Notes: generated by a model not told the origin, from the sequence alone. 64,000 bases of DNA from Macrostomum lignano (GCA_002269645.1 NIVC01001686.1:147660-211659); one strand, 5' to 3'. Positions 33,142 through 64,000 are shown, numbered from the stretch's first letter. Made by a program: numbers and translations.

Positions 33142-33178
<37 letters not shown>

Positions 33179-43630: not shown

Positions 43631-43719
43631 CCCTCCCCCCTAAAAAAAAGAAAACGACGCGCTTTGACTGAATGAAAATGAAAAAAAAATGTAATGAAAT
43701 GAAACTGAATGAAAGAGAC

Positions 43720-44140: not shown

Positions 44141-44268
44141 CCCCGCCCTTCCTTCGGGGCCGCTCCCAGTGCCAAACAGAGGGATCACAACGACGATCAG
44201 AGGAGAGATGGGATGAAATGAAGGAGTGAAGGTCTCTTGCCCGCCCTGGCATCCTGCCCCAGAACCCC

Positions 44269-45150: not shown

Positions 45151-45359
45151 GCCCGGAAAGCAGTGCCTGCAACAACCACGACTCACTTTTGAGAGCAGGG
45201 CAATGGTTCCTTCGAGCCTCTTTGGGGCGCCGATCCTTCATCCCTGATGGCAGGGTTGGGCAGGTGGGACCTCCACTGACGGGCCTTAAGAGGGGAAATA
45301 TATATTTTTGTTTGTGAAGCAGAGGCAATAACACGAGCCCAGTTTTCAATAACGCGGGT

Positions 45360-45571: not shown

Positions 45572-48500
45572 TTAATAATAAACGGGCGTTCCATAACGCT
45601 GCGGAACCCTTCGATCCCTCTGGGGTCGACCTTCGATGACTTCAACTGGCGCTTCCGGCTGCGGCTGCACTCCTGGCTGCTGCACATCCATTGGTTCTCC
45701 CTCCTCTCGAACCCGCCCGGAATGTCGCCACCATCGCTCCTCATCCTCATCGTCCGATTCCTGCGAGTCCTCCCTGACGGATTCCGTCTCTTGAGCAGGA
45801 CCTGGGTGGTACCTCCTTGGTGCAGGACGCCGAGGGCCACCGGTGCCGTCGACCGGGTACTTCCGGTACCGAGGCAGGAGGTTGTTAAAGTGCACCACCT
45901 TGATCGGCTTCCGTCGACCTTCCTGTCGAATCCTATAGCGCGTCTCCGACAGCTTCTCGAGAACTACGGCAGGTCCGGTCCAGGGTGAGTGGAGCTTCGC
46001 TTTGGCACCGGCCTTCAACACGGGGTTGTAGACGAACACCTCGTCGCCAGCCACGAATTCTCGACCCTTCACCTTCCGGTCGTACCAGTCTTTCTGCACT
46101 CGTTGATATGACGTTATTCTCTCACGCACCACCCGATGGGCTTCCACGAGCGTCTCCCGCAGGTTCTGGACTTCCTCGCAGTACGGTTCGATGTCCAGTG
46201 GGCGCGCCACTCCCAAGTCAACTGGCAGAGACATCTCGCGACCATGCAGAAGGAAGAAGGGTGAGTAGCCGGTGCCGCGGTGCACACTGGAGCGATACGC
46301 CATGAGCGCCGGGGCAACGAATTCGTCCCACCGCCTCTGATCCGGCTCCTTCACCAGGTGCGCCCGGATCACTGCAGTCAGCGTCTTATTGAAGCTTTCC
46401 ACTTGGCCGTTTCCAGAGGGGTGATAGGCGGTCGTACGCGTCTTTCGGATATTCAGACTTTCGCACAGCTGGCCGATCAATTGCGACTCGAAATTGGCTC
46501 CCTGATCCGAGTGGATTGTTCCTGGGGCTCCGTAGTGACAGACCCACTCCTCGAGCATTGCCCTTGCACAGGTGCTGGCCGTCTGATCTGGCACCGGTAC
46601 TGCCACTGGCCACTTACTGAACGCGTCCTGCATCGTCAGTATGTATTTGTTGCCTCGGACGCTGGTTGGCAGTGGTCCAATCAAATCCACCATCACTCTT
46701 TCAAACACATGGCTGCTGGGAATCGGCTCCAATGGGGCCTTCCGCCGCATCCCGGGCTTGCTCCGGTTACAGTCGTCACACCTTCGCACAAACTCCTCGA
46801 CCTCTCGCTTCAAGCCGGGTCTCCAGAATCGGTTCCTGACTTTCTCCAGAGTCTTTGCTACGCCGAAGTGTCCACCTCCTGGTCCAGAGTGCAGCGTCTG
46901 CAGAGCGTCGGGGATCAATTTCTTCGGGAGAACAGCCCGCGGTGGGTGACGTCCCAGATCCTTGATGACGAGGGTGTTGTCCACAATTTCCAGCCGAGGC
47001 TTTTGTGCCCAGATGGCTCGGGTCGTTGGTGACGCACCCCGAGGTGGCTCTTCGTTTGCTCGGCCGGCGTGCATCGACTGGTAAACTGGAGCGATGTCGT
47101 TGTCCACAGCTTGTGCTGCTGCCAGCTCATCTCGGCTGAGCAACCCGAGCAGCGTCGTTACCCTGACCCCGGGGAGGTCATCAGTCCGGCACGACGGGCA
47201 GTTATCCATTTCGGGATGTCGTCGCGTCGGCTTGCGTGACAGCGCGTCCGCATTCTGATGACGCGCCCCTGGCCGATGCTCCACTGCGAAGTCGAATGGC
47301 GCCAACCTCTCCATCCACCGAGCCAACTGGCCTTCCGGCTGCCTCATACTTCGGAGCCACTGCAGACTTGCGTGGTCGGTGCGCACCCGGAACCTCCGGC
47401 CAAGTAGATAGTACCGGAACCTCTCTGCGAATGTCACCAGCGCCAGGAGCTCGATTCGTGTCGTGCAATAGTTGAATTCGGCCCCTTGCAGACGCCGACT
47501 CCCGTACGCAATAACCCGCTCTGACCCGTCTTCTTGTACCTGCGACAAGACTGCTCCGAGACCCTGTCGGGTACTTCCATCGGTATCCAAGATGAACTCA
47601 CCAGCCGTGGGGTCGAAGTTCGGGTAGGCCATCACGCGGCAACCGGTCAATTCTTCTTTCAGCTTTTTGAAGGCCTCATCGTGTTCCTCTCTCCAACTGA
47701 ACGGCTTGTCTTTCTTTGTCAGATCAAAAAGTGGTGCAGCGACTATCGAGAATTCTGGTATGAAGTTTCGGTAGTAACCAGCCAGACCCAGGAACGACTG
47801 AAGGTCTTTTGCATTTCTTGGAATGCTCCAGTCACGGACTTCCTTGATCTTCTCCGGGTCGACATCGATTCCGTCCTTTGACACGACGTGGCCAAGGAAT
47901 TTGACCTCATCGGCCAGGAATCTGCACTTAGATGGCTTTAGCCTCAAGTTGGCTGCGCGCAGGCGCTGGAATACCGCCTCGAGATTCGTTAGATGCTCGC
48001 TGACAGTTCGGGACCAAATGATGATATCGTCGATGTAGACGAGCGCCATTTTCCACAGAAGGTCGTGTAGTACCATATTCATCAACCTTGTGAATGTCGC
48101 CGGCGCATTGGTCAATCCGAAGGGCAGCACCTTGAACGCGAATTGCCCCCGATGCGGAATGACAAAAGCAGTCTTTTCTTGATCCTCCCTTTTGACCTTA
48201 ACTTGCCAATAGCCGGAGCAAAGGTCGAGCGTCGAAAATACAGCCGCACCTCCGAGCGCTTCAAGTGCGTCATCGACACGCGGGATTGCTATGGCGTCCT
48301 TGACAGTTCGTTGATTCAACTCTCTGTAGTCGACACACAGTCGCAGTTCCCCATTCTTCTTACGGACACAGACCACTGGCGAACTCCACGGCGATTGGGT
48401 CGGTTCAATCATCTTCGTTGCCAAAAGCTCGTCGATTTGTCGGTCGACTTCGCCGCGCCAATGTGGCGGTAGCCGTCGCGGAGGCTGTTTTACGGCTGTT

Positions 48501-49390
48501 CCGGTGGTCTCAATTTCATGCTGCACGATGTCCGTCGTCCCGAGGCGCGCTGTACTCTCTGCGAAAACATCTGCGTATCGATTCACCAATCTTAGGAAAC
48601 TCGCTTTGTCTGCCCCCGTGAGCTGCTTGGAGCCGTGCTGGTTCAGTGCCGCCTCTGGGTCCCATGGATCGCAGCTGGGTCGTAAAACCGACGCTTGCTC
48701 TTCGATGCTGGCTACCAGAACCTCTTGAGCCGGATCTGATGGTCGAAACCAGCCGATGACAGCTCCCTTCCGCAGCCGCAGCTCGGAGTCCGTGACATTC
48801 GCGAAGTGAACTGGTAGGGTGTTGCCCTGCTGGATGAGGCAGACGCTCCTGGCTAGCATTGGTCTCTCATCGCTCTTCAGTTTTTCGTCTGGCTCGGCGA
48901 CGCCGAGCACTCCGGAATTCTGTGTCGCTGTTCTCCGAATCCTGGCTGAGACGGTCCGTTCGTGATTGGCCGGAATGATCAAGTTTTCGTTCAGGTACAA
49001 CCGGCAGACGACTGGTTTGTGCTTGGTCTCTCGGATTGGCACACGTGAACCGTTCACGCGGAAAACTCCTCCGGCGAAATCGATTTGGCACCGGTGGCGG
49101 CGTAAGAAGTCGGTGCCTAGCAACAGTTCGTAGCCGACCCCTTGGACCACCGCAATTGGCGTCTGTAAAGTTTCTGATCCGAACTGTAGGGGAAGCGACG
49201 CGCATCCTAACACATTCATGGGAGTTCCGTTCGCTGAGATCAGGTGGGTTTCCGAAGGGCTGAGTTCAACTCGAACCGACTTGCTCAACTGCCGCCAGGT
49301 CCTCTCGTTCACCAGCGACATGACCGAGCCCGAATCCAACAGACACGGCAACTCAATCTCGCCAATTTTTACCGACACGTAGATTGACAC
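45572..49390 (-). CDS. pol: Gypsy Pol polyprotein (PR-RT-RNaseH-IN), intact, translated via a -1 frameshift from gag
   Basis: PR LLDSGS; RT LDLCSGYWQ, LPFGLTNAPATF, YIDD; RH ILDTDGS, ELLA, TDH; IN HSGPGGGH..CDDC, VDLIGP, HSDQG, NGQVESFN; C-terminal GPY/F-like WTGP. Confidence 0.97.
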   Translation of the reverse strand: MSIYVSVKIGEIELPCLLDSGSVMSLVNERTWRQLSKSVRVELSPSETHLISANGTPMNVLGCASLPLQFGSETLQTPIAVVQGVGYELLLGTDFLRRHRCQIDFAGGVFRVNGSRVPIRETKHKPVVCRLYLNENLIIPANHERTVSARIRRTATQNSGVLGVAEPDEKLKSDERPMLARSVCLIQQGNTLPVHFANVTDSELRLRKGAVIGWFRPSDPAQEVLVASIEEQASVLRPSCDPWDPEAALNQHGSKQLTGADKASFLRLVNRYADVFAESTARLGTTDIVQHEIETTGTAVKQPPRRLPPHWRGEVDRQIDELLATKMIEPTQSPWSSPVVCVRKKNGELRLCVDYRELNQRTVKDAIAIPRVDDALEALGGAAVFSTLDLCSGYWQVKVKREDQEKTAFVIPHRGQFAFKVLPFGLTNAPATFTRLMNMVLHDLLWKMALVYIDDIIIWSRTVSEHLTNLEAVFQRLRAANLRLKPSKCRFLADEVKFLGHVVSKDGIDVDPEKIKEVRDWSIPRNAKDLQSFLGLAGYYRNFIPEFSIVAAPLFDLTKKDKPFSWREEHDEAFKKLKEELTGCRVMAYPNFDPTAGEFILDTDGSTRQGLGAVLSQVQEDGSERVIAYGSRRLQGAEFNYCTTRIELLALVTFAERFRYYLLGRRFRVRTDHASLQWLRSMRQPEGQLARWMERLAPFDFAVEHRPGARHQNADALSRKPTRRHPEMDNCPSCRTDDLPGVRVTTLLGLLSRDELAAAQAVDNDIAPVYQSMHAGRANEEPPRGASPTTRAIWAQKPRLEIVDNTLVIKDLGRHPPRAVLPKKLIPDALQTLHSGPGGGHFGVAKTLEKVRNRFWRPGLKREVEEFVRRCDDCNRSKPGMRRKAPLEPIPSSHVFERVMVDLIGPLPTSVRGNKYILTMQDAFSKWPVAVPVPDQTASTCARAMLEEWVCHYGAPGTIHSDQGANFESQLIGQLCESLNIRKTRTTAYHPSGNGQVESFNKTLTAVIRAHLVKEPDQRRWDEFVAPALMAYRSSVHRGTGYSPFFLLHGREMSLPVDLGVARPLDIEPYCEEVQNLRETLVEAHRVVRERITSYQRVQKDWYDRKVKGREFVAGDEVFVYNPVLKAGAKAKLHSPWTGPAVVLEKLSETRYRIRQEGRRKPIKVVHFNNLLPRYRKYPVDGTGGPRRPAPRRYHPGPAQETESVREDSQESDDEDEERWWRHSGRVREEGEPMDVQQPGVQPQPEAPVEVIEGRPQRDRRVPQRYGTPVYY

Positions 49391-49489: not shown

Positions 49490-49549
49490 GGCCTCTACTG
49501 TCTCGGCGGAACTCCCTCGCCCCTGCGGAAGTTCCCCTTGCCGTTTCCC
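49490..49549 (-). other. -1 ribosomal frameshift signal (G GGA AAC + stem/pseudoknot)
   Basis: Heptamer at plus 49543-49549 in X XXY YYZ phase; the -1 frame stays open into pol; GGAACTTCC/GGGAGTTCC stem begins 7 nt downstream. Confidence 0.75.
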
Positions 49550-49988
49550 TGTTGCTGACGGGTTGGGCAGTTAGTCGCGATGTGCCCTGGCTTGTTGCAG
49601 AAGAAGCAGCGAATTCCTCCCGTTCGTCGAGGCTTCTGATGGTCGCCTTCGTCGGAGTCGGTCGGTCGAGCTGCGGCGCTGCTATGCGGTTCCGCTCTCA
49701 GCGACTCGAGCTGAACCACTTTGCCTTGAAGCTGCCTCACCAGTTTCTTCAACTCCTCGAGCTCTTTGTCCTTTTCTTGGGAGTAGGCTCCATCCTCCCG
49801 AGGCACAGATTCCGCCGCGCCGCTCACCACGAAGACTCCTCGGTGGCCGCTGCCAGTTGCTCCAGCCGATCTCGGTCCCTTCGCCGCCTTGGACGCCGCC
49901 TCGAGCTGCCTCACCGCGCGTTGTGCTGCCACCAGACCTTCGGGCTGCTGCAGGTAGAGCTTCTCTCGCTGGAGGTCGGAGAGTCTCA
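49495..49988 (-). CDS. gag: Gypsy Gag, C-terminal portion (5' part displaced by the transposon insertion)
   Basis: CFFCNKPGHIATNC zinc knuckle preceded by a coiled coil; sequence character changes abruptly at 49989. Confidence 0.85.
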
Positions 49989-50649
49989 CCCGATTGAAAA
50001 TCCGTCGGCACTCCGAGTGCCGATCGGCACTGCCTGTCGGCAGTCAGGGTCGATTTGACTGCCGATCGGCACTCAGTATCGGCACTGAGTGCCGACCGGG
50101 TAGTGCCGACTGTCGGCACTACCCGTCGGTACTGCCCGTCGGCACTGCCCAGTAGTGCCGACATGTCGGCACTACCCGTCGGCACTGCTCGTCGGCACTG
50201 CCCAGTAGTGCCGACATGTCGGCACTACCCGTCGGTACTGCCCGTCGGCACTGCCCAGTAGTGCCGACATGTCGGCACTACCCGTCGGCACTGCCCGTCG
50301 GCACTGCCCAGTAGTGCCGACATGTCGGCACTACCCGTCGGCACTGCTCGTCGGCACTACCCGTCGGCACTGTCGATATGTCTTTATCTGTCCCCATGTT
50401 CTCTTAATTTTCTATGCGTCTAATTTCATGCTATTTTGGCAAGTGTCCCACACAAAATAAATCAGGAACTGCATTGGCTAAAGTATCCAACAAAGCCCAC
50501 GCTTCAATATGCGACGTTTCGATTCATAGCGACCCTTCATTGATTTTGTTGCAAACGTTATACGGCATTGGCGGATAGAAGTCGTACAGAGATGTAGCAG
50601 ATATTGCCATGAATTCAGGTTGTGAGCAAAGGCTACTACCGACATGACT

Positions 50650-50840
50650 TTGTAACAGTTTGTACGACTTTGTGGTAGTTCTGTTTGTAGGATTTTGTAG
50701 CCCCTTGTAGGACTTTGTGTGACTCTTTGTAGGACTTTGTGAGACTCTTTGTAGGACTTTGTGAGACTCTTTGTAGGACTTTGTGAGACTTTGTAGGACT
50801 TTGTGTGACTCTTCGTAGGACTTTGTGAGACTTTGACAGT
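50650..50840. repeat. ~22-bp tandem repeat upstream of the transposase
   Basis: Unit ttgtaggactttgtgagactct. Confidence 0.85.
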
Positions 50841-51121
50841 AAGACTTATGCAATACAGCTTTTACATCATACACTTGGGTCCTGAACGGGACTGGGACTG
50901 TCTCAGTAGAAAGGGTGTTCTAATGGCATGTATAGATCTAGAGCATAGGAGCATGGGGCATAGAGCATGTATTGATGATACGCATGGCTTTAGACAACTT
51001 GAAAGACAATCCAACAACATGGATATTTTTTAAAGCTGTAGTTTCGCAATACCATCTGACATGTCTCCCATGCGCATATCCTCTAGCGCATTTCAGCCAG
51101 CTGCCAAAAGTCTTCGTGGCA

Positions 51122-54100
51122 ATGGACTTTGCCAAACATATCAAAGCGCGCGACCGTAAGAGAAAGCTGGAGGCAGTCTGTCGGTCCGATCGGCGTGCAG
51201 CTGCAGCTGCAAGTAAGTGCATGCGTGTGCTGCAGTTTGGCCAAGCCGCAGCATCTAGTTCGATGCAAGGTGCAGCTAACCATGACGAGGACGATGCCGG
51301 TGGTGTTGCCTCATCTGACGGTCCTGCTGAGCTTTTCAGCTCTAGCTCTGACTGCAGTTCCGACCGCGGCTCCGAACGTGGGTCTGACCGCAGCTCCGAT
51401 AGAGCCCCTGGCTGCGGATCCGACTGCGGCTCCGAACGTGGGTCTGACCGCAGCTCCGATGGAGCCTCTGGCCGCGGATCCGACTGCGGCTCCGAACGTG
51501 GGTCTGACCGCAGCTCCGATAGAGCCCCTGGCCGCGGATCCGACTGCGGCTCCGAACGTGGGTCTGACCGCAGCTCCGATAGAGCCCCTGGCCGCGGATC
51601 CGACTGCGGCTCCGAACGTGGGTCTGACCGCAGCTCCGATGGAGCCTCTGGCCGCGGATCCGACTGCGGCTCCGAACGTGGGTCTGACCGCAGCTCCGAT
51701 GGAGCCTCTGGCCGCGGATCCGACTGCGACTCCGAACGTGGGTCTGACCGCAGCTCCGATGGAGCCTCTGGCCGCGGATCCGACCGCAGTCCTGACCCCA
51801 GCGATGCGACGTCTGATGATGACGGTGATGACGTAAGGCTTGCATTGTACTGTTGAAGGCTGGCACTCGTGCGTATACGTGGCTGATGTGATCCTGCCTG
51901 CAAATATCAGTTAGCACTCAGCAAACTTAAGCACGCAATGTTCATCGGCTGCCTAGAACCAATCTAGTTATGATTCCCTCCTTCCTCCCCTTCCTACCCT
52001 TTCTCTTCCATCCGCCAGGGTGCGCTATGGGACGACGTCATCGAGGAATCCGCTGACAGTGTCAACGGTGATGGCGGTGCTGGCGACGGGGCTGGCGGTG
52101 CTGGCGACGGGGCTGGCGGTGCTAGCGGTGCTGTCGACGAAGGGGCAGCCCATGGCGGCGACGACGGCGTCGTTCACATCGCGCCAGGGTTTCTGCAACC
52201 GGTGCATCGCACAATGCCGCACCTGTCATACGCCACTTTGGCAGTGTACGGAGAGCTCCTAGCCGAGAAGCACAAGTTGTCGCGAAACGCCACGGCGGAC
52301 CTGCTGCTTTACACGAAGCTCGCGCTTCCCCCAGACGCCGTGTTTGCCGACAACCCGTACCGCCTGCGACGGTTTCTGGAGTCCTGCAACTCCCTGCGCT
52401 CCGAACGACTTCTTTTTTGTCCTAGGTGCAGCCGGCCCCTGGTGGAGGAGGCCCTTCCACTGACCTGCGAACCCTGCGGAAAGCAGTTTTCGTCAGTGGA
52501 CCGCGTCGCCAAGGTCTGGCGGATGGATGTGCGAGCCCAGCTACGGCAGCTCATTGAGCGCTGCGGCCTGTTGTCGGTCGTCTCCTTCCCCGCGGACGTC
52601 ACGCGGCGGCCGGGTGGTCTGAGCTTGTGGCAAAGCACGGCATACTCGGCCTTTACGCACCTCATTGACAAGGCCGCTCGCTCAGATCTGACGGTCACGG
52701 TCAACATCGATGCATTTTCCGTGTTCAGCCGGGCGGTGTACAACATCTGCCCCGTGTACCTTACCGTGAATGAGGTCCCCGACCACATGCGAGCGCGCTT
52801 CACGGTGGTCTGCGCTCTGTGGGCCTGCAGGAACAAGGTGAGCGTGGACGCCTTCCTGCCGTGGCTGGTGGCCCAGCTGAACAGCCTTCGCATCGAGGGT
52901 GTTATGTTCCGCACAGGTGGTGGACGAGACGGCACGCGTGGCGGCTGCATCCGCTTCCATCCGCTCCTCTTCGTGCTTGACGCGCCTCAGAGGGTTGAGG
53001 TGACTGGGTTACAGCACTGCTCAGCAGTGTACGGCTGCGATCACTGTTACACCGTGACTCTCCATGATGCCGACCGCGGAGGAAATGCGCGCATTTTCCC
53101 ATGCGAGCTTTCGGCCGACGCGCTGCAAGCAGCATCCGACGCCGGTTGCACACGGCCGCGGTACCGGGCATTGCAGGACACCATCCTCCTGGCGACCACG
53201 ATTCCGGCGGGCGCAGGCCACAACCTCGGCGTCGTCAGGCTGTCTCCTCTTCATCGGCTGCAGGGCTTCGACTTCATCACCTCCTGCCCGCCCTGCTACC
53301 TCCATCAGTGCCTCGTCGGCGTTGTCGGTTGGCTGCTGCGGCAGCACTTTCTGCCCGTCGGCAAGCGACCTGACAAGATGGCCGAGAACCCGGACTTGTC
53401 CCGCCATGTGGCTGAAGTGGACGCCAAGGCGGCCAGTATTCGAGTGCCTGCGTCGCACCAGCGGGGCCCTCGCACCCTGGCGGACCTCGGCCACTTCCGC
53501 GGGCACGAATTTGAGTGCTGGCTGTTGGTGTACGGCCCCATGGTTCTCGGCGACACGCTGGGACCGTTCTATTACAATCAACTGCTGCTCCTGTCCTCTT
53601 CCATCTTCTGGCTGTCTCTGGAGAACTGCCCGCTGACGGAAGTTACTCGTGCAGCGAAGACCCTGCGAGTATTCTACGCCAGCCTGAAGGATGGGTTTTC
53701 GCCGGCCGCCATGACCTACAATGCCCACCAGGTCTGTGAGCACCTCGTTCCCGCAGCCTTTCTCTTCGGACCCGTGTGGCGCACCTCCGCCGGCCTGTTC
53801 GAGTCTCTGCACTACGGCCTCAAAACGCGCGTCAAGGGCGCCAGGTTCGTCGGTGATCAGGTACGCAGAGAGACCCTTTTCTCTAATTAGAAAAATATAG
53901 TATAATGGCATCTACGCCTCTATATTCTACTCACTAGTAGTCAGTACGTATGCAGGATGCCCACTCTTGTATCGCACTAGAAACCCACCCCCTGGGTTAT
54001 CGTGGTATATATAATTACAAAGGTTCCCCCTTGATACCATGTTCCCCTCCGAGGGCTTGCGTTGCTGCATCAGACCGTTACCTAACTTGCAACGGGCGCC

Positions 54101-54686
54101 TCCCACCCTTCATTTCACTCAGGTGCACTCTGCCATCAGACGGCAATTCAGCAGGCGTGCCGTCATGCACCAGTTGGGCCTGGCCTCGCCCTTTGCGGCC
54201 CGTGGATTCCTTCAGGGTGTCCAAGAGACCATGGCCGACGGGACCAGGGTGTACACCAAGCTACATGACGACGAGTTCCGCTGGGCTCTGTTGACCAACG
54301 GATGGCGCATTGAGCGCTACTTGCCCGCGCTACAGCACCAGCGGTCCCTGTGCTGCTTCGTCGCCTTCGCCGCCAGTGACGACGGTGTCCAACTGGCTTT
54401 CGGTCGCGTCGACGCCATCCGCAGGTCCCCCACCCGCGGGACTGCAATCCTGATGGTGCGTCGCCTTCGTACCGTCTGCCTTCTGGACCCGGAATACTAC
54501 ATCTCGGGCGTCGCACAGAACGACGGCTGCCGACTGAGGCACATTCAGCGCGTCGTCGACAACCCATTCGGCGACATCGGCGGCATGCACTTCTGTCTCC
54601 CCGTGGTGGACGTGCTTGGCACATGCTGTGTAACTGACACCCACATAGCTTTCCTCCCGCACGTGCAAACCTCCTTCGCCGCCTAG
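51122..54686 (+). CDS. CMC/EnSpm-type DDE transposase, ~1038 aa; exons 51122-51832, 52019-53860, 54123-54686
   Basis: GT-AG phase-0 junctions join all three exons in frame. Motifs: FCPRC..CEPC zinc finger, TVNIDAFSVFS (D1), FVLDAPQR (D2), GCDHC, PCYLH (C/D-x2-H), RTLADLGHFRGHEFECWLL, and GLFESLHYGLK (E). Confidence 0.88.
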
Positions 54687-55161
54687 TGGGCGGGCGGCAA
54701 GTGCCGAAGATTTGCCGAACAAGTGTGTCAGACAACTGCAATCCATGTCTAGTGTCTCCGACTGTCCGCAGCCCGACTTCTGTCCATCCCGTATTCTCAC
54801 ATTTACTCCGACGAGGACAAGTGTGTAGATCAGTGTGTACACCTCCGCTGCTGCTGTCCCTGATCGGCACTGCTTCTATTCTGTGCATATATTTAGCCAT
54901 GTTTGTCACTTTTCTCGATCTGTATTTCCAATGGCCACCTTCAAGGACGAGTATATATATATGACAACGTAATATGCACGAAGATGTGTAACTTTCATCA
55001 GCTGTCTATCGTACCTCTTTAATCGTACCTCTTTATCGTACTTTATCGTACCTCTTAGTTTACGCCTTTTGTACGTCTGCATATTATATTTACTCAGACA
55101 ATGGCAAGTATCTACCAGTGATCCGTAGCTACATGTCTATAGATATATCTTTCCCCTATAT

Positions 55162-55430
55162 CCCGCTGGGAAATATGACGGATTCCTGGTGCGATTCCTT
55201 GTGGAATCGTCGCGGATTCCATTGAATTTTTTCTGCCTAAAAGGAATCTGCTGTGCAGGGCAGATTCTTGGGTCTGAATCTGCCCTGCAGGGCGGATTCC
55301 GTAGCGTTGAACTGCGTGGAACGCGCACACTGCGCGAGCTGAAGAAGTTCCGTGGGCACGAATCCGAAATATGGCTGATTGCCTATGCGCCCATCGTTCT
55401 GCAGGACTGCTTTCATGACTTGTGTATGAA
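55162..55430 (+). pseudogene. Terminal fragment of a second, related CMC element fused to a transposase remnant
   Basis: CCCGCTGGGAAATA start, GGAATC/GATTCC repeats and a 14-bp hairpin (55254-55289), then RGTRTLRELKKFRGHESEIWLIAYAPIVLQD, which is paralogous to the main transposase segment RGPRTLADLGHFRGHEFECWLLVYGPMVLGD. Confidence 0.65.
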
Positions 55431-55693
55431 GTCGGAACACGGTAGGATTCTAAGGCAGTATCGCCAGAGGGGAAATGGCTTCCCGATGCATGGGCACAAA
55501 CAGAGAGAGACGAACCTTGGGGAGCGAAGGCTCCCAAGGCTAGTATATTTATGGGGTCTCGGCCCCCTCAAGTCCAACAGTGAGTAACGCACTAGAACAG
55601 GCCTCAGCAGGCATGGGGGCTGGGTCTTGGGTCTTGGGGCCGTAGTGGCCGGGTCTGGGTCTGGGGAAGAGCGGCTGGGTCTTGGGATGAAGA

Positions 55694-55696
<3 letters not shown>

Positions 55697-55771
<75 letters not shown>
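55697..55771. repeat. (GA)n microsatellite
   Basis: Direct reading. Confidence 0.95.
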
Positions 55772-55773
<2 letters not shown>

Positions 55774-56708
55774 AAGAGATAAAGAGCAGTCAGGGGTTGC
55801 GGGTAGGAGTTGGAGCTCCTCCAAAGCAGGGGTAGCCCGGGGAGCCGTCCCGCCAGACCCCAGGCCACCACAACTGCCTTCCGGACGACTACTGTCATCA
55901 CCTGCTTCTGCTGTCGGCCTCTCTGCTGTCTCTTCTTAATGCTTTTGTTTGACTTGTTGCATTGTGACATCTGGAAGTACGGGGAAGGCCATGAAAGAGA
56001 CAAGGGAAAAGGAAAAGTCATTAACTGTTCATAATCTGTCCACTGTAGGCCTGTGTGCAGGGGCTTAGCTTTGGTTTTTGTCTGCTTTAGGCCTGCTGGC
56101 TAGATTGCATTTCGAAGGAAAGAATATTGTTAGCATATAACAACGTTGTATATAGTGTGGCATGAATACTGCAGCTAGTATAAGAATGTTATTATTGTGT
56201 ATATAGCGATGTGCTGTATGTAGTGCATAAGTGCCTATACTATTACGTAATATTACTGTCTGTAAACTTTTGTTTGGGTTACTTATACTATTCTTGTACT
56301 GTCTGTTAAATACACCGCTCCCAACCGCTGTTCACTCTACTTCACCTGCTGCACGTCTCGTTATTTTAAGAATTGAAACGACTTCACGGAACTTCCTATT
56401 CCTTGTTTCTCTTGCACGGTATACGGCAGCTGTCCATGTTTTGCATGTCTTCGAATATAGTGTAAAACATATTGTGCAGAAACAACAACAACTACTACTA
56501 CTACAAATTAGTACAGGAATTGCTCCATTTTCTCGTACGACTTCTCCCTAAAAGCAACAACAACAAAAGCTGAACTGCACATGAACCTACCGTACAACTT
56601 ACGGTACTGCATTAATCCATTACTGCAGTACTGCATTAATACAGTAATCAAGTTTATTTGAACCCCGTCCCTCGCATGTGGATTACAGCTCCGCCGAACT
56701 GCCGAGCG

Positions 56709-58855
56709 ATGCAGTCATCGACCGGCCGTGCCCCACCTACCATTGACGTGCTGCCGTCGGAGTTGCTCATGCAGGTGTTGCAGCACCTCACGGTACCCAC
56801 TCGGCTGGTGTGCGCACAAGTATGCCGCCGTTGGGCAGACGTCGTCCGCGCACCAGTGTTGTGGGAGAGACTGCCTGTCACCGCCACTGCACTGGACGAC
56901 TACAGCACAGCGGCACGGCTCATGACCTTGGCGACGGCGGCGAAAGAGTTAGATTTGGGCACCGTGTTCGAGCCGCCTAGCGCGATCGCCATCGACCGCG
57001 CTGCCACGCTCCTTCTGCGCTGCGGCGAGCTGCGTACGCTCCGCCTGCTGGACATGGGCCAGTACACCGGCGGCCCAAACCTCCTCACGGTGGCTGGTCG
57101 CAGTTGCCTACAACTGCGGGAGCTATCATTGGCAGAATGCCCAGGCATCTTCAACCCGGAGGCGCTGGCCAGTCTGAGCGACGGTTGTCCCAGACTGGAG
57201 AAGCTGGAGCTGTTGACAGACGGCGAGGAAATCTTTGGTGGCGACGTCGCACAGTGCGCTGCACCCTTTTGCCGACTGCTGGGCCGCATACAGGTAATAC
57301 GGCATGTATAATTGCTCAAACAGTAAGGTCATATGACCCATGTCACATACGTTCTCATGTCACATGGCACAGTCCTTTTAGTCGAGATGGCTGTCTATGT
57401 ATTAATATTATTAACTTCACCCCCCCCTTCTCCGGCATTCCTACAGGTGTTGCATGTCCGCGCAGACATGCTTGCCACTTCAGCTGGTCCCGTAGCAGCG
57501 GCCATCGCTACAGGCTGGTGCCGCTTCACCCGGCTGCGTGAGGTCACCCTAGACCCGCCGGCATCCCCGTCTCCGGCCAGGGCTACACGAGGCATGTTGT
57601 TACAATCCATTTAAAAATAGTCACTTCGTAGTGGGCTTAGTAATTACGTATAGGCCTTCTCCGGGAATTGTGTGCAACCATTAATTTCTTTCTAAATAAT
57701 GAATGCGTTTTAACGACGAAATGCACCCTTCCTTATCTCTCAGTGCTGCTCGACATCATCAGCGGGCAGGGAGACCAGCTACAGCGCTTGACCGTGCACA
57801 GCCAGGTCGTCACGGATGCCATCGCCGGTCAAATTGCTGCACGAGTCGGCCTCAAGGGCGCCAACCTGCGTCACCTGCATCTGGACGCAGGCGACAAGCT
57901 GACCGTGTGGGGCCTGCGGCAACTGCTGAAGTGCTGGCCTGGGCTCCAAAGCCTAAGCCTCGTCCACTGCCTCAGTCTGGGCGCGGAGGGCTTCCGGTTG
58001 GCCTGCCAGGAGCTGCCCGACTTGACGCGGCTGAGATACCAGATAGCTGCCAGTCCGGACGCGCCAGCCGGGTCTGCCGACGTTTTCCGTGGCACTCGGC
58101 TACCTCCGTCGCTACGAGTGCTGCAGCTTTACGTCACGCCCACCGACGAAGCTTGCGGGATCAGGGTCGGTGAGCCTGCATTCGCGACCGCTCTCGGCGG
58201 ATGTCGTGGTGAGTGTGGTGCATATTACATTTGACGCACAAATGTGCATGCACGTGACGTTAGTCTTAGTCTTTATGAGGCATGCATGTTCATCCTGTAT
58301 GGTGCGCACGCCTCCGCTCTAGACCTACACACTGCACACTGGACGCTACTATGTACACTTCTCCATCCGTACGCAGGCCTGACTCACGTGACTATCTCGT
58401 GGCCCGCCTGCGACGACAGTCTCGTGGCCTGTCTGTTACTCACGCTGCCACAGCTGCAGTGCCTGCACTTGTTGGACTGTCGGCTGGTGACGGGCAAAGC
58501 CTGGGAGACTCTCCCTCCTGCAGGTATTCGTCCAGCCGACCACGCCTCTGCTGCAATGCTCGAACTGACGCTCGCAAACTGCCCCAGCCTCGACGATGGC
58601 AGTCTATCGCGTCTGTGCACCTGTTCCGTCGCGACCAGCCTTAACTGGCTGTGGCTCGATGGCACCGCCGTTACGCCGGACTGTCTGACGCTGCTGGCCA
58701 GGGAATGCCCGAGCCTGTTGGAAGTTTACATCCGTTGGACGGAACTGCCCACGAGTAACATTGAAATGTGGCACCACGCCGCTGCCGTCGTGAACAAAAA
58801 TCGTGACATTCATCTGCGCATTGATTTGCCGGAGCTAGCCAATATGGGGCGGTGA
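56709..58855 (+). CDS. F-box/leucine-rich-repeat (FBXL-like) protein, ~557 aa; exons 56709-57293, 57447-57591, 57744-58208, 58377-58855
   Basis: F-box IDVLPSELLMQVLQHLTVPTRLVCAQVCRRWADVV..LW is followed by cysteine-containing-type LRRs (LRELSLAEC, LEKLEL, LQSLSLVHC, LQCLHLLDCRLVTG, LELTLANCPSLDDGSL, LNWLWLDGTAVT). Intron phases are 0,1,1; intron 2 needs a GC donor. Confidence 0.85.
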
Positions 58856-58872
58856 CAGTGATGACGTGAGCA

Positions 58873-59232
58873 TAAGACAGTAGTGTAATGGATGTACCGA
58901 TCTCCTTCCCCCTATTTACAGTGCCCTCGATGAACTGCATATAAATATCGTGCTACCTTGCATTTATGCATTTACTGTACAGTATGACAGTGCGGTTTTG
59001 GCGTCCTGCCACGTGCGCACAGCAACAGTGCCAGTTTTTCTCCATATATATTACTTTTGACATACCGGTCATCCTTTCTTGTTTCCATGTCTCCCACGCA
59101 CGTCTTATCTTGCACAGCTATACATCTGTCGCATTTCGACGCAGCATTTAAGACAGTAGTGTAATGGATGTACCGATCTCCTTCCCCCTATTTACAGTGC
59201 CCTCGATGAACTGCATATAAATATCGTGCTAC
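58873..59232. repeat. 84-bp identical direct repeat (58873-58956 and 59149-59232)
   Basis: taagacagtagtgtaatggatg...ataaatatcgtgctac occurs twice. Confidence 0.9.
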
Positions 59233-59984
59233 GATGCATTTACTGCACTTTACTAAAAACCGAAGTTTTGGCGTCTCGCCTAGTGCGTACTACAGCACAT
59301 GCGGTGTACTTCCACAAATGCATTTCCACATAAACGTTCGTATGACATGAAAGGGCGAGAGCGGTCGCACGGCTGAGGGACAGCTCACATATTTCTGCTT
59401 CCGTTTCGTGTTGTCCATTATCTTTTCCATGTCTTCCATATGTCTTCCACAGCTACATGGGGTCATTTGGTGCAGCATAAGGCGTGTAGTAGTGGAGGGC
59501 ATGATGACGTGTAATAGCGTAGATCTGAATGTACGTTACTGTATATTAGGTAACAAGTGGCGACATGTAATCTGCGAATGACAACCGATGTAAATAAAAA
59601 AAACTGTAATTACGTTTTTCGCAACTTACATCACGGGTTCAATACGCTGACAGACTCTAAAATAGCGCTGATCGAGGGGAGTGGCGAAAGCCGCCCACAG
59701 ACGTACTACTACAGGTACCCACTAAGAAATTTCAATCGGGGTGTACTTATTACACTTTTGTTTTAGGGTACTTACAACCTTTCCAGGTATGTAGGTAATA
59801 CATGCGGTCGAGAACGTTTATTGCGTATAGGCAGGTGTCTTATTATGTACTCTTAATATAAGCCATAGTATAGGCAAGTCTTATTATATGTTCTCCTAAA
59901 TGATATGCTCAAAAGTCTTAAAATATTATTAATATTAGCAGCAGCTATACACAACTTAATATAATGTGCATACCTACTTACTGA

Positions 59985-60277
59985 CAGTGTTGGGCAAAGT
60001 TAATTGGAAAAGTAACTTCGTTAAAAGTTAAACAGTTAACTTTAACTGGCAAAAAAAGTAACTTAACTTGGATAACTTTTTAACTTTTCAGAAAAAAGTG
60101 ACTTAAGTTAAAAAGTTAACTTTCCGCATATTACTGTAGTAATACAAAGTACTTAGTTCATTTTTCCTCTCCGCATCCTCTCCTCTGTTACTTTTTGTGC
60201 CAATGGCCCAATTTCGGGAGAGACCAAGACAGAGAGAGACAGTGGGAGAGAGCGAGAGAGAGAGAGAGATAGAGAGG

Positions 60278-60327
<50 letters not shown>

Positions 60328-60470
60328 CAGTGGCGCAGCCAGCAATTTTTTAAGGGGGGGCATTAGGTTCGTTGAAAAGAAATTAAGTAACGGAAAACTG
60401 CTAAAAGTTAGTGAAACACTAACTTCGTTAATAACTAGTAAACTATTTAACTAGTTAGTGCCCAACACTG
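59985..60470. mobile_element. hAT-type MITE with a perfect 8-bp TSD, nested in the CMC element
   Basis: TIR CAGTGTTGGGCA...TGCCCAACACTG; CTTACTGA at 59977-59984 and 60471-60478; AAGTAAC/AAGTTAAC subterminal motifs; internal (GA)n. Confidence 0.92.
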
Positions 60471-60590
60471 CTTACTGACAGGCATGAATCTACAAGTGAC
60501 GCCTCAATATCCGATTTTCCAGCACCCGGACCACCACTTTTCGAAGCAGCGTTGATTAGAACAAGCGTCTGCAAGTTACGCCCATAGAAA

Positions 60591-62797
60591 ATGCTGAACG
60601 CCAGACGCAAGCGTACGACGACTAATGACCAACAATTTCCACGCTACTGGGTTGGCAAGATTCTCGCCGGACGCAGCGCCGGCGAAAACGACCTGTTCTC
60701 TGAGGAGTACATCAAGGCCGAAGGTACGTCAGGCAGCGGCCCCTATGCGGAAGGGCAGCACGTAGAGGCCCGTACTAGCCAGCGAAGCAAGGCGCAAGCT
60801 GTCGAACTGGTACACGGACCAATTGCTGGTCCACGGAATACAGCCCTAAAGGAGCTTGGGAAATTCCGGAAGAAGTTCCTGGTGGCCAGTGGCGCTGTTG
60901 ACCTCCCGGACGACGGTTGCAGCATGTGCGCCAGCTACCGGCAGGAGGTTGGCACCCTGAAGACGCGTCTCCGCCAGATGCAGGACCTGCAAGAGTCCCA
61001 GCGGGAGGTCCACAGTGCTGTGGTGGAGGACCTGGAGCGAAAGGTGGAAAAACTGCGTTCGGAGCTGGACGTGGCGAAGAAGGAGCTGGAACAGCTGGGG
61101 GACGCTGAACAGCAAGGTGCTCATGACGTCTTCTACGAGCGCTGGCGTCGATCGGCAGATCAGCTCAAAGCGGTGACGGCGATACAGCAGACGCTGCTGC
61201 AGGCCATGCACAAGACGGCTGTTTGCCTGGGAAGTGCTCAACAGGAGCTCATGGAGCAGACAGCTGCAGCAATCGCGTCCAGTGATGAGTCGTGTGGTAT
61301 GAAGATCGCAGATCACACACTTCAGATGCCATCCATGGCCTCTGTGGGAGGCGGGGACATGGTAGACGTCACGGCCAGTGCCACGGCGCCCGCGGATTCG
61401 CGGCTTGGAAGCTTGAGTGGCGCACTGCGATCGACGGTCGCGGCTAGCATGCGGTGTGCGCTCCCAAGGCTGGACGAAGCATCCCAGACGGCGAGGAACT
61501 CGGATGATGAGTTGGTACCGCTAGTAGGGTCTCACCCGGCTGTCTTTGTTAGGCACAGTTTCTTCGGCCCGATGCGCAGCACCGTAGCAGCGTTCCATAG
61601 GCAAAAAACGCAGACGAGCCAGAAGGCGCTTCTGCGCCTTCTCTGTCGTGAAGTTTTCACGGAGGAGGAGCAGCTGAATTGCTCCTTCACCGGTCGCCAG
61701 TGGGACGGCGGAAGAAACCTGCCGCCCATCCCTGAGGCCAAAAGGGAGGCCATTATTGCCTTCCTAAGCGACGTCAAAGTTCCGACTACGGACCCCAGCA
61801 GTGGAACCTGCCTGCTGGGGCGTGCTTTCGGCGCAGTGAAGGAGGTCACCTTGCGGTAAGGAATACGGTGTTCTATCATAAAAGTGGTAGCACTAGTACA
61901 AAGGGTAGCAGTGGCAATGGTTATATGGGCTGCATAACTACGGTAATATAATACTGTAATAGTGCACTACGTGCCTTATATACTGCTTAAACAACAGTAT
62001 GCCATATGATTGGGAATAAAGGATTCCTGGAATGCTTGTCGATATGTAGTTAATTAGATGCACTTTCCATTTCCTAATCTTCCACGCCCACCGCATGCAG
62101 GAACAAGACCAAACGCGAATCCGCTAACAAGGCCAACAGCAGGCCTGACGATCAGAACCCCACCGCTGCCACCGGAACTGCTGATGATCAGGCTGATGCT
62201 GACGCCGGCAGTGCCAGCCAGCATCAGAAGCGAAGGCGGACCGACAAGGAGGCGCCCACCAGCGGGGACGGCGCTTCCATCCGGAAGAGCAGCAAGCGCA
62301 GCAGGCCCGATGGTGTTGATGAGGACGACAGCCGTCATTCAAAGTCGGCTTTTGGCCACGGCACCCACAACAGCAAAAAACATAAGAGCGATAGCAGCCG
62401 GCCGGCCTCTAGCCATCGCAGCGGCACCGGCCACGGCCGCGGCACTGGCAACGGCAGCGGCACTGGCAACGGCAGCGGCACTGGCCCCAGCAGCGGCACT
62501 GGCAATGGCAGCGGCACTGGCCCCAGCAGCGGCACTGGCAACGGCAGCGGCACTGGCCCCAGCAGCGGCACTGGCAACGGCAGCGGCACTGGCCCCAGCA
62601 ACGGCACTGGCAACGGCAGCGGCACTGGCCCCAGCAGCGGCACTGGCAAGGGCAGCGGCACTGGCAACGGCAGCGGCACTGGCCCCAGCAGCGGCAGTGG
62701 CCCCAGCAGCGGCACTGGCAACGGCAGCGGCACTGGCCCCAGCAGCGACACGGCCCATGTCGACGGCGACAAGGGCGACAGCGATCTAGGGGCCTAA
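60591..62797 (+). CDS. Coiled-coil + BEN-domain protein with a G/S/T-rich tail, ~653 aa; exons 60591-61855, 62101-62797
   Basis: Heptad region LKTRLRQMQDLQE...ELDVAKKELEQL; BEN-like ALLRLLCREVFTEEEQLNCSFTGR...LPPIPEAKREAIIAFL...AVKEVTLR|NKTKRE. The phase-2 GT-AG intron joins to an open exon containing NLS-like KRRR and GTGNGSGTGPSS repeats. Confidence 0.75.
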
Positions 62798-64000
62798 GTC
62801 GGGGTCTAGGACGCGGGGATTGTATGTTTAATTAAAGTATTGAAGTATAATTCCTAGCACAGTTGGGGGACCACGTAACGTCCACGATGCCATTGATAGA
62901 CCCTTGAAGAAAAAAGTATTATATAGCCTTAGTTTCCTTACTCTTCTAGCATTACTCTAAATGCGTATAGCATTATAGCTAAGAAGTTAGTTTTAAGCTT
63001 TTACGTTTAAGTTTTAAGTTTTAAGTTTTGAGCATTAGTTTGCACCTGCTTATACCGTAATGACCACCAAAGACCCGCTTACATTTCCGATGCGAGCATC
63101 CACCTCAAACCCCACCCCACCTCAGACATTTATGGGAGTCGGATGGTATTTGGAGGTCCCGCTATAAGTGATTAGTAATATAAGTAGCAAAGTATAACGT
63201 AGGTCCAGTTACTTCCAGAAGTAGGTAGACGCTAGCTGTAGTAGTAGAAGTAGTAGTTGTAGTAGCAAGCGAAGGGGCAGCATTTTATTAAATTGTGTGT
63301 CATTTCCTTTTAACAGAACACATAGCACGCGTACGTGTGCCCAAAATCCGAGTCTCTCTGCAGGGTTCAGTTTCTGTTTTATTATTTGTTTATTTTTATA
63401 CGTGAATAATTCGTTGCCTACCATCCCACGCAACAGTTGTCGATTGGCACCAATTCCCTTCTGCTTTCGCCTCGGTCAACTGTCGAGCCTTTACAAGGCT
63501 AGTCATCCAAATAAATGGGTAATATTTATACATGTATCTACTTTTGGCCACCATCTATGTGACAATTACACTGTTCTGTCCATATTTCCTGCATTGCCTG
63601 CCACTTCTTTATGGAACGCATGCTCGATAGGGATACATGTACGTGGTACGTGTACGGTGATTCAGTGATGCTGGAGTTAAATTGCTGTCTCACGTCCACA
63701 GGTCTAATTTTATTTTAATATAATTTTGCCATTACACTAATAACGTAATTAACTATTCCATTGATTCACGACACAAAATGCCTCCGATATATGGGAGCCG
63801 ACACGAGGCCAATGAGTGCCAATGTGAGTACCGATATGAGGGTTGACATGAGTGCCGATGGGAGTACCGATATACGGGCCTACGGCCTACGTGCCGACAG
63901 GGGTGCCGATTTAGTGCGATGGGAGTATCGATGAGTGCCGATTTGAGTGCCGATATGAGTGCCGATTTAGTGCCGACGGGAGTGTCGATGAGTGCCGAAT

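What the first reader, a model, noticed from the sequence alone, without database searches (positions are those of the whole stretch)
49989..64000. Giant three-gene CMC/CACTA-like transposon: transposase + F-box/LRR + BEN-domain protein
Seen: a CCC-start terminus with TCGGCACT subterminal repeats, mirror AGTGCCGA repeats ~14 kb away, and three intact, co-oriented, spliced genes between them. Established: plant CACTA elements encode a transposase plus TnpA, which binds subterminal repeats, and BEN domains are DNA-binding modules also found in viruses and mobile elements. An SCF-type F-box/LRR gene is not a standard CMC component. Inference: this is an autonomous animal CMC family with its own module of cutting enzyme, end-binding factor and ubiquitin-ligase adaptor, possibly for evading host silencing. 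Intact ORFs and insertion into a Gypsy with an intact pol argue for recent activity.
Basis: partly seen in the sequence, partly recalled or inferred. Interest (0 to 1): 0.9.

Follow-up and report, generated by a model that had tools for sequence, protein, structure and literature searches.

The report
Flatworm CACTA-type transposon carrying an F-box gene
This is a real, apparently intact 14-kb cut-and-paste DNA transposon of the flatworm Macrostomum lignano whose cutting enzyme and BEN-like DNA-binding partner are shared with related elements, while its F-box/LRR ubiquitin-ligase adaptor gene is an unusual extra found only in this family.

Summary
The window is Macrostomum lignano DNA. Joining the window's left flank to L001's right flank restores an uninterrupted Gypsy gag reading frame with a 3-bp duplication, TCA.

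Gene 1 is a CMC (CACTA/Mirage/Chapaev) transposase. It has the full D..D..C(2)C..H(4)H..E signature and links through intermediate relatives to Pfam Transposase_21.

Gene 3 has a CxxC motif, a coiled coil and a BEN-like C-terminal domain. It is conserved directly downstream of the transposase in four related elements: one M. lignano sister family and three environmental contigs. A third M. lignano family gives a weak match. Gene 3 is therefore a core accessory gene, the likely counterpart of plant TnpA.

The F-box/LRR gene is intact (four exons, 550 aa) but absent from every related element examined. It lies in a mosaic 5.9-kb spacer that also holds a fossil of another transposase. I read it as lineage-specific cargo. 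Its use by the element is possible but untested.

I saw only two nearly identical copies, so copy number and selection remain unmeasured. Verdict: a new variant of a known kind, of moderate interest.

The parts
45572..49390 (-). Host context: intact pol ORF (protease, RT, RNase H, integrase) of the Gypsy LTR retrotransposon that received the insertion
   Evidence: 1272-aa ORF. Pfam RVT_1 1.4e-34, RT_RNaseH, rve, Integrase_H2C2 and aspartyl protease.
49495..49988 (-). C-terminal part of the Gypsy gag (zinc knuckle), cut off by the insertion
   Evidence: zf-CCHC 2.7e-5. Joining it to L001's right flank restores a 326-aa gag ORF.
49986..49988 (.). Left copy of the 3-bp target-site duplication, TCA
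   Evidence: TCA lies directly left of the TIR in the window and directly right of the TIR in L001. With one TCA removed the gag frame stays open. The sister element in L002 has AAG on both sides.
49989..50002 (+). Left terminal inverted repeat, CCCGATTGAAAATC
   Evidence: Homology with copy L001 starts exactly here. It is a perfect 14-bp reverse complement of L001's right end.
50003..50372 (.). Left subterminal array of the 8-bp motif TCGGCACT, in both orientations, including four 24-bp perfect palindromes (GTAGTGCCGACATGTCGGCACTAC). Probable binding sites for the accessory protein.
   Evidence: 25 exact copies here against 1.6 expected in the whole window. Palindromes; 53-bp higher-order unit. 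The array is 159 bp shorter in L001.
50646..50835 (+). Second internal repeat array, 22-bp unit TTTGTAGGACTTTGTGAGACTC, about 8 copies, upstream of gene 1
   Evidence: Tandem Repeats Finder. Function not tested.
51122..54686 (+). Gene 1: CMC-type DDE transposase, 1038 aa. Exons 51122-51832, 52019-53860 and 54123-54686. The N-terminal region holds 60-bp coding repeats.
   Evidence: Gene model mapped from P0001. It is intact with GT-AG introns. Invariant Zn-ribbon cysteines, D, D, C(2)C, H(4)H and E. 3105 relatives were found, and intermediate ones carry PF02992.
54845..55207 (.). 363-bp segment present in the window copy but absent from L001
   Evidence: Alignment of the two copies.
55315..55407 (+). 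Fossil fragment (about 31 aa) of a different CMC transposase, covering the conserved FRGHE.E.WL motif region
   Evidence: 53-63% identity to all related families alike, E about 1e-9.
56676..58855 (+). Gene 2: F-box/LRR protein, 550 aa. My model has exons 56676-57293, 57447-57537, 57744-58208 and 58377-58855.
   Evidence: Pfam F-box-like 1.2e-12 and F-box 2.8e-9. PDB FBXL2 1.7e-5 and SKP2 4e-5 over residues 23-180. All introns are GT-AG and there is no internal stop. The splicing is predicted, not transcript-supported.
60591..62797 (+). Gene 3: accessory protein, 653 aa. It has an N-terminal YW..KGP region, a CxxC motif, a coiled coil, a BEN-like domain (about 61488-61856) and a Gly/Ser/Thr-rich 18-bp repeat tail. 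Exons 60591-61855 and 62101-62797.
   Evidence: UniRef names P0002 and P0003 'BEN domain-containing protein'. A profile of the four sister-element proteins hits only this ORF among 547 window ORFs, E 9.5e-11. The intron is confirmed by P0002/P0003.
63795..64000 (.). Start of the right subterminal array (AGTGCCGA, about 12-bp spacing), cut by the window end. By comparison with L001 the array continues and the right TIR would end about 388 bp beyond the window.
   Evidence: In L001 the array runs to 22906, with about 38 motif copies (one mismatch allowed) in the inverted orientation.

Best explanation
An autonomous cut-and-paste DNA transposon of the CMC (CACTA/EnSpm-Mirage-Chapaev) superfamily in Macrostomum lignano. 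It is about 14.4 kb in the window copy and 13.85 kb in L001, and it inserted into the gag gene of a Gypsy retrotransposon.

Shown:
- 14-bp perfect TIRs with the CCC...GGG termini typical of animal CACTA-type elements.
- A 3-bp TSD.
- Dense arrays of an 8-bp subterminal motif, in opposite predominant orientation at the two ends.
- An intact DDE transposase with the CMC motif set.
- A second gene (CxxC, coiled coil, BEN-like domain) conserved directly downstream of the transposase across this lineage.

Inferred mechanism: the transposase recognises and cleaves at the TIRs. The coiled-coil/BEN-like protein binds as a dimer to the TCGGCACT repeats, many of which form palindromes, and brings the two ends together and/or regulates the element, as TnpA does for maize En/Spm.

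The F-box/LRR gene is a lineage-specific addition to this two-gene core. It looks like a competent SCF substrate receptor. I put roughly 35% on the element using it, for example to degrade a host factor or one of its own proteins, and roughly 50% on it being a passenger gene.
For: - Termini and mobility: homology between the two copies starts exactly at 49989, with unrelated left flanks. The right TIR and the TCA duplication are, and the restored gag ORF. The sister element L002 7391-16488 has TIR CCCGCTGGAAAA and AAG on both sides. The marine element L003 has a 27-bp TIR, CCCGCTGAAAAAATCGTCCGG..., and its own subterminal TCCGG repeats.
- Transposase: 3105 relatives. Intermediates at E about 1e-35 reach the Pfam gathering score for Transposase_21. 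The invariant residues D376, D466, C485-x2-C488, H715-x4-H720 and E740 match the CMC definition quoted in PMC12730594. CCC termini of animal CACTA elements are described in PMC1636069.
- Accessory gene: the same architecture in the same position and strand occurs in L002, L003, L004 and L005. The profile test gives E 9.5e-11.
- BEN assignment: Pfam BEN E 0.004 for the L002 homologue. The top three PDB hits of the family profile are all BEN domains. hhalign P 8e-4. UniRef naming.
- F-box gene: absent from L002-L008. It is intact with a good F-box consensus.
Against: - Only two copies were seen, and they differ by 7 substitutions. Copy number, selection on the genes and actual mobility are therefore unmeasured.
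- L001 has no matching TSD (CAG on the left, TCA on the right). It is either a recombinant or a chimeric assembly.
- The window's own right end lies outside the window.
- The window transposase itself gets no direct Pfam hit.
- The window BEN-like domain gets no Pfam or PDB hit on its own, and its single-sequence AlphaFold model was unusable, pLDDT 44.
- Binding of the BEN-like protein to TCGGCACT is an analogy, not a result.
- The marine element L003 shows no matching TSD.
Confidence: 0.8

Rival explanations
1. One reading: the F-box/LRR protein is a working third component of the element. It would act as an SCF adaptor that the transposon uses to degrade a host silencing or repair factor, or to control its own proteins.
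For: The gene lies inside the TIRs in both copies and is co-oriented with the other two genes. It is a 550-aa ORF over four exons with canonical splice sites and LRR periodicity kept through all exons. The F-box motif is well preserved. No close host parent gene was found among 5.8 billion proteins, which argues against a very recent capture of an annotated gene.
Against: It is absent from all four related elements that share the transposase + BEN pair, and from a third M. lignano family. No gene model contains it in the NCBI or UniRef M. lignano protein sets, whereas genes 1 and 3 are annotated. The spacer around it is a mosaic, with a fossil of another transposase and flanking (GA)n tracts. 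With two near-identical copies no selection test is possible.
Confidence: 0.33
2. The F-box/LRR gene is a passenger. It would be a host or foreign gene, or the remains of a recombination with another element, picked up into the spacer of a two-gene CMC transposon and carried along without any role in transposition.
For: The spacer between transposase and accessory gene is 0.17-1.1 kb in relatives but 5.9 kb here. It contains a relic of a different CMC transposase, (GA)n tracts on both sides of the gene, a 276-bp duplication and a 363-bp indel between copies. The gene is not annotated in either public M. lignano protein set.
Against: No donor gene was identified. The gene keeps its introns and a full-length open frame, which is not typical of the fragmentary captures seen in Pack-type elements. 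The missing annotation in L001 can be explained by homopolymer indels in that assembly.
Confidence: 0.5
3. It is not a mobile element. The region would be a host gene cluster that happens to be flanked by repeats, or a single locus seen twice because of assembly redundancy.
For: Only two copies were seen and they are 99.95% identical at the substitution level. L001 shares the Gypsy-type right flank that the window's left flank predicts.
Against: The copies diverge exactly at the TIR boundary into unrelated left flanks. Related elements with homologous TIRs, their own TSD and the same gene pair occur in another M. lignano family and in marine contigs. The transposase family has thousands of members across animals.
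Confidence: 0.03

Closest known systems
Animal CACTA-superfamily ('TRC') elements such as SmTRC1 of Schistosoma mansoni (PMC1636069)
   Same: A flatworm host, a TNP2-type transposase, TIRs that start with CCC, a short TSD, insertion into LTR retrotransposons, and spliced multi-exon genes.
   Different: SmTRC1 is reported with 2-bp direct repeats; here the duplication is 3 bp. The window transposase does not hit Pfam Transposase_21 directly. No BEN-like accessory gene or F-box gene is mentioned in the SmTRC1 passages I read.
Maize En/Spm (plant CACTA) with TnpD transposase and TnpA
   Same: A 3-bp TSD, short TIRs followed by arrays of a short subterminal motif in both orientations, and a transposase plus a second element-encoded protein. 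The CMC catalytic motif set is shared.
   Different: The termini are CCC, not CACTA. The second protein is coiled-coil/BEN-like and shows no similarity to TnpA. The genes appear to be separate units rather than alternative splice forms of one transcript; this was not tested. An extra F-box/LRR gene is present.
Chapaev and Mirage lineages of CMC in animals
   Same: Animal hosts, a CMC transposase and 2-3 bp TSDs. Intermediate relatives hit both Transposase_21 and DUF1258, a family named in Caenorhabditis.
   Different: I made no phylogenetic placement. From my own knowledge, these elements are usually described as a few kb long with a single transposase gene. Here the element is about 14 kb with three genes.
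Cellular FBXL proteins (SKP2, FBXL2/20) and F-box proteins of viruses and bacteria that hijack SCF ligases
   Same: An N-terminal F-box followed by cysteine-containing LRRs. The best solved relatives are FBXL2 and SKP2.
   Different: Similarity is low (E about 1e-5, restricted to residues 23-180). The gene lies inside a DNA transposon. I know of no described animal transposon with its own F-box gene, and the paper library was not searched for one.
BEN-domain DNA-binding proteins (BEND6, NACC1; viral BEN proteins)
   Same: An alpha-helical C-terminal domain with the L..LL..lF..EEL...s.tG core. A coiled coil or other oligomerisation module lies upstream. BEN domains bind short, often palindromic motifs (my own knowledge).
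   Different: It falls below Pfam's threshold. It acts here as a conserved transposon accessory gene. A library search returned no listed paper containing 'BEN domain' together with a CMC/CACTA/Chapaev term.

Membership tests
CMC (CACTA/EnSpm-Mirage-Chapaev) DNA transposon superfamily | [quoted passage not shown] | tested here: met
   In a 30-sequence alignment D376, D466, C485-x2-C488, H715-x4-H720 and E740 are invariant. All are present in the window copy.
CMC (CACTA/EnSpm-Mirage-Chapaev) DNA transposon superfamily | Sequence homology to TNP2-type transposases (Pfam PF02992 Transposase_21) | tested here: inconclusive
   The window protein and P0001 give no direct Pfam hit. Relatives found at E about 1e-35 (P0013, P0017) score 34.4 and 34.6 bits against a cut-off of 28.6. 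Membership is therefore transitive.
CMC (CACTA/EnSpm-Mirage-Chapaev) DNA transposon superfamily | Short TSD of 2-5 bp (3 bp for EnSpm) | tested here: met
   TCA lies on both sides across the window and L001 junctions, and the gag ORF is restored. L002 has AAG on both sides. L003 does not match, and L001's own left flank (CAG) does not match.
CMC (CACTA/EnSpm-Mirage-Chapaev) DNA transposon superfamily | Termini 5'-CA...TG-3' / CACTA core (true 'in most cases') | tested here: not met
   The termini are 5'-CCC...GGG-3'. This is the variant reported for animal CACTA-type elements in PMC1636069, so it does not exclude membership.
CMC (CACTA/EnSpm-Mirage-Chapaev) DNA transposon superfamily | Subterminal repeat arrays and a second element-encoded protein (En/Spm-type organisation) | tested here: met
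   TCGGCACT arrays at both ends. The accessory gene is conserved. Binding between the two was not tested.
BEN domain (Pfam PF10523) | Match to the family profile at its curated threshold | tested here: not met
   The window protein gives no hit even at E 10. The L002 homologue scores 17.8 bits, E 0.004, against a cut-off of 23.2.
BEN domain (Pfam PF10523) | Remote homology to, or fold of, solved BEN domains | tested here: inconclusive
   The profile of five homologues has BEND6 and NACC1 BEN domains as its top three PDB hits, at E 0.4-0.8. hhalign against NACC1 gives P 8e-4, probability 24%. UniRef names the proteins BEN. The AlphaFold model was too poor to use.
F-box/LRR (FBXL) substrate receptors of SCF ubiquitin ligases | N-terminal F-box motif | tested here: met
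   PF12937 at 1.2e-12, 47.8 bits against a cut-off of 24.3; PF00646 at 2.8e-9.
F-box/LRR (FBXL) substrate receptors of SCF ubiquitin ligases | C-terminal leucine-rich repeats of the cysteine-containing type | tested here: inconclusive
   Alignment with SKP2 and FBXL2 extends into the first LRRs, residues 23-180. Pfam LRR models score below threshold. The LRR periodicity through exons 2-4 was seen by eye only.
F-box/LRR (FBXL) substrate receptors of SCF ubiquitin ligases | Binding to Skp1 and assembly into an SCF complex | not testable with these tools
   Needs co-immunoprecipitation or yeast two-hybrid with M. lignano Skp1.

The most novel reading that the evidence does not exclude
An animal DNA transposon encodes its own SCF substrate receptor and uses it to send a host silencing, chromatin or repair factor to the proteasome. 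This is the strategy of viral and bacterial F-box proteins, not previously documented for a eukaryotic transposon to my knowledge. It would work alongside a BEN-domain end-binding protein that defines a previously undescribed two-gene CMC lineage.
Probability: 0.15. Interest if true: 0.85.

Novelty: new variant of a known kind. Interest (0 to 1): 0.5.

Why it matters
There are three points of interest.

1. It defines a CMC lineage in which a coiled-coil/BEN-like protein is the conserved partner of the transposase. The lineage is found in flatworm genomes and in marine and other environmental contigs. This gives a testable animal counterpart of plant TnpA. It also offers a possible origin for some of the many BEN-domain genes in invertebrate genomes.

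2. The element looks intact and very young in M. lignano, a transgenic model flatworm. It could be tested for activity and perhaps used as a large-cargo vector.

3. A transposon-borne F-box/LRR gene is unusual. If the element uses it, that would be a transposon hijacking the ubiquitin system. If not, it is a clean example of whole-gene transduction by an animal DNA transposon.

Tried and rejected
- Direct Pfam scans of the transposase and of gene 3 gave no relevant hit.
- A PDB sequence search with the BEN-like region alone gave nothing.
- The single-sequence AlphaFold model of the BEN-like region had pLDDT 44 and was not used for fold search.
- Word-indexed homologue searches returned only M. 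lignano self-hits for genes 1 and 3, and one weak FBXL2/20-like hit for gene 2.
- Two metagenome scans, one with the transposase alignment and one with the F-box protein, found nothing.
- Look-ups of the UniRef gene 3 models on contigs found nothing. My own gene 2 and gene 3 models are not in the protein collection.
- A search for TIR, LTR or TSD signatures of a nested element around the F-box gene found only (GA)n tracts and a local duplication.
- The more distant transposase loci L007 (hemichordate) and L008 (Cotesia) showed no clear accessory or F-box gene.
- I took the 1-bp indels between copies for frameshifts at first. All lie in homopolymer runs, so I treat them as long-read assembly errors.
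- Lanisha, a recently named EnSpm-like lineage, is mentioned only in the fungal-transposon paper and in moss (Ceratodon) genome papers, so I did not pursue it.
Full report
**Source and observation**

The only close database match to the long ORF at 52202-53890 is a hypothetical protein of the flatworm Macrostomum lignano (P0001). The window is therefore M. lignano DNA.

- The sequence CCCGATTGAAAATC starts at 49989.
- The 8-mer TCGGCACT occurs 34 times in the window against 1.6 expected. Twenty-five copies lie in 50005-50371 and six reverse-complement copies in 63851-63998.
- The left array contains four perfect 24-bp palindromes.
- To the left lie a Gypsy gag fragment with a zinc knuckle and a 1272-aa pol ORF with protease, RT, RNase H and integrase domains.

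**A second copy defines the ends**

The contig that encodes P0001 (L001, NIVC01002297.1 of assembly GCA_002269645.1) carries a complete second copy. Homology with the window begins exactly at window 49989 (L001 9053) and runs to the end of the window.

In L001 the element ends at 22906 with ...CCCGATTTTCAATCGGG. The right flank in L001 starts with TCA and continues as the N-terminal half of a gag gene on the minus strand. The window's left flank ends in TCA.

I joined the two flanks with one TCA removed. This gives an uninterrupted 326-aa gag ORF (...DRFMQGV|RLSDLQREK...) carrying weak capsid-type matches and the zinc knuckle. The element therefore made a 3-bp duplication on inserting into gag. 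By alignment, the window copy should end about 388 bp past the window, for a total of about 14.4 kb.

**The two copies compared**

L001's left flank is unrelated host-like DNA and ends in CAG, so L001 itself has no matching duplication.

The copies differ by only 7 substitutions plus a few structural changes:
- 159 bp of subterminal repeats;
- two 3-bp indels, one of them inside gene 1;
- a 363-bp segment at 54845-55207;
- 15 bp of microsatellite.

All the 1-bp indels lie in homopolymer runs and are probably assembly errors. The real differences cluster in the left 6.6 kb. From 56556 to 63657 there are none.

My inference is that L001 is a recombinant, or a chimeric assembly, of two copies. 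Its right part would match the window's locus and its left part a copy at another site. Either way there are two different left junctions that break exactly at the TIR.

**Gene 1 is a CMC transposase**

The gene model (exons 51122-51832, 52019-53860 and 54123-54686; 1038 aa) is intact with GT-AG introns. An exhaustive HMMER search found 3105 relatives in flatworms, ticks, a hemichordate, a wasp, fish and environmental contigs.

The protein has no direct Pfam hit. Relatives at E about 1e-35 do exceed the gathering score of Transposase_21, the TNP2/En-Spm family, and also hit DUF1258.

In a 30-sequence alignment the following are invariant: zinc-ribbon cysteines, D376, D466, C485-x2-C488, H715-x4-H720 and E740. 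This is the motif set given as diagnostic for EnSpm, Mirage, Chapaev and Transib in PMC12730594.

The CCC termini depart from the usual CA...TG. They match what DeMarco et al. reported for Schistosoma, Aedes and Tribolium CACTA-type elements (PMC1636069).

**Gene 3 is a conserved accessory gene**

Its model (exons 60591-61855 and 62101-62797; 653 aa) agrees across the intron with the UniRef proteins P0002 and P0003, which the source names 'BEN domain-containing protein'.

I fetched the loci of the closest transposase relatives:
- an M. lignano sister family, 41% identical, with at least 12 gene models (L002);
- a Tara Oceans contig (L003);
- two JGI contigs (L004, L005).

Each has a gene of the same build directly downstream on the same strand. 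The build is an N-terminal YW(V/I)..KGP(F/Y)E region, a CxxC motif, a coiled coil and a C-terminal domain with the core L..LlR.lF..EEL...t.tGR.

A profile built from those four proteins alone, searched against all 547 ORFs of the window, hits only the gene 3 ORF. The E-value is 9.5e-11 and the next best is 1.9. A third M. lignano family (L006) has a weak match.

The BEN assignment rests on four weak but agreeing results:
- the UniRef names;
- Pfam BEN at E 0.004 for the L002 homologue;
- the family profile's top three PDB hits, all BEN domains (BEND6 and NACC1 twice), at E 0.4-0.8;
- hhalign P 8e-4 against the NACC1 BEN segment.

The domain fails Pfam's threshold, and the AlphaFold model was unusable. 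I therefore call it BEN-like.

**The related elements share the overall architecture**

L003 is a complete 9.9-kb element with a 27-bp TIR, CCCGCTGAAAAAATCGTCCGG..., and its own subterminal TCCGG repeats. L002 7391-16488 has TIR CCCGCTGGAAAA and AAG on both sides. The lineage thus has a common terminus (CCCG..TGAAAA), short TSDs, family-specific subterminal repeats and a two-gene core.

This is the organisation of En/Spm, in which TnpA binds subterminal repeats. That is why I infer that the coiled-coil/BEN-like protein binds the TCGGCACT arrays. Nothing here tests that inference.

**Gene 2, the F-box/LRR gene**

My model has four exons, all GT-AG, and gives 550 aa with no stop. It scores 1.2e-12 on Pfam F-box-like. 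Its best solved relatives are FBXL2 and SKP2.

The gene is present in both copies. It is absent from L002 through L008. The transposase-to-accessory spacer is 0.17-1.1 kb in the relatives and 5.9 kb here.

That spacer also holds:
- a 31-aa fossil of a different CMC transposase, 53-63% identical to every family alike;
- (GA)n tracts on both sides of the F-box gene;
- a 276-bp duplication.

No protein containing this gene exists in the searched collection, although genes 1 and 3 are annotated. No donor gene was found either.

I conclude that the F-box gene is a lineage-specific gain. Whether the element uses it is open. I put about one third on use and about one half on passenger status.

**Verdict**

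The element is a new variant within a known superfamily.

The most useful new point is that the BEN-like gene is a conserved partner of this transposase lineage. The most unusual point is the intact F-box/LRR gene inside the element. I saw only two nearly identical copies, so activity, copy number and selection could not be assessed with the tools at hand. No step had to be referred.

Noticed in passing
window 55315-55407 (+): A short fossil (about 31 aa) of a CMC transposase lies between gene 1 and the F-box gene. It is equally distant (53-63%) from all related families, so it is not a recent duplicate of the element's own gene. This suggests that the spacer has a composite origin.
   Followed up: partly
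window 55696-55779 and 60227-60326: Two (GA)n microsatellites in the same orientation bracket the 4.4-kb segment that holds the F-box gene. They could mark how the segment was acquired, or they could be coincidence.
   Followed up: no
window 62418-62755: The 18-bp coding repeat at the 3' end of gene 3 (Gly/Ser/Thr-rich tail) contains GCGGCACT, one mismatch from the subterminal motif TCGGCACT. The homologue in L004 also ends in a repetitive tail with a different unit.
   Followed up: no
window 51359-51784: There are 60-bp in-frame tandem repeats (about 7 copies) in the N-terminal region of the transposase gene. The public gene model from L001 (P0001) contains fewer repeat units because it splices out about 300 bp of the array as an intron.
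   Followed up: partly
window 54845-55207; 50111-50269: A 363-bp segment and 159 bp of subterminal repeats are present in the window copy but missing in L001. All real differences between the copies lie in the left 6.6 kb, which suggests that L001 is a recombinant or chimeric assembly of two copies.
   Followed up: partly
L001 9040-9052 versus 22907-22909: Copy L001 has CAG to the left of the TIR and TCA to the right, so it has no matching TSD. Its left flank is host-like DNA with a satellite array rather than Gypsy.
   Followed up: partly
window 50646-50835: A second repeat array (22-bp unit TTTGTAGGACTTTGTGAGACTC, about 8 copies) lies just inside the left subterminal region and upstream of gene 1. 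It may be regulatory.
   Followed up: no
window 58873-59242: A 276-bp tandem duplication (94-nt cores, 98% identical) lies just downstream of the F-box gene's stop codon.
   Followed up: no
L006 12218-12904: A third M. lignano transposase family (33% identical to gene 1) has a weak accessory-like ORF downstream (E 2e-5) and no F-box gene.
   Followed up: partly
window 44269-45186 (-), 43561-44250, 32575-33348 (+): Outside the finding there are three items: a DnaJ-domain ORF next to the Gypsy element, a proline/arginine-rich tandem repeat block that is open in all six frames, and an exon-like ORF with a nuclear-receptor C4 zinc finger.
   Followed up: no
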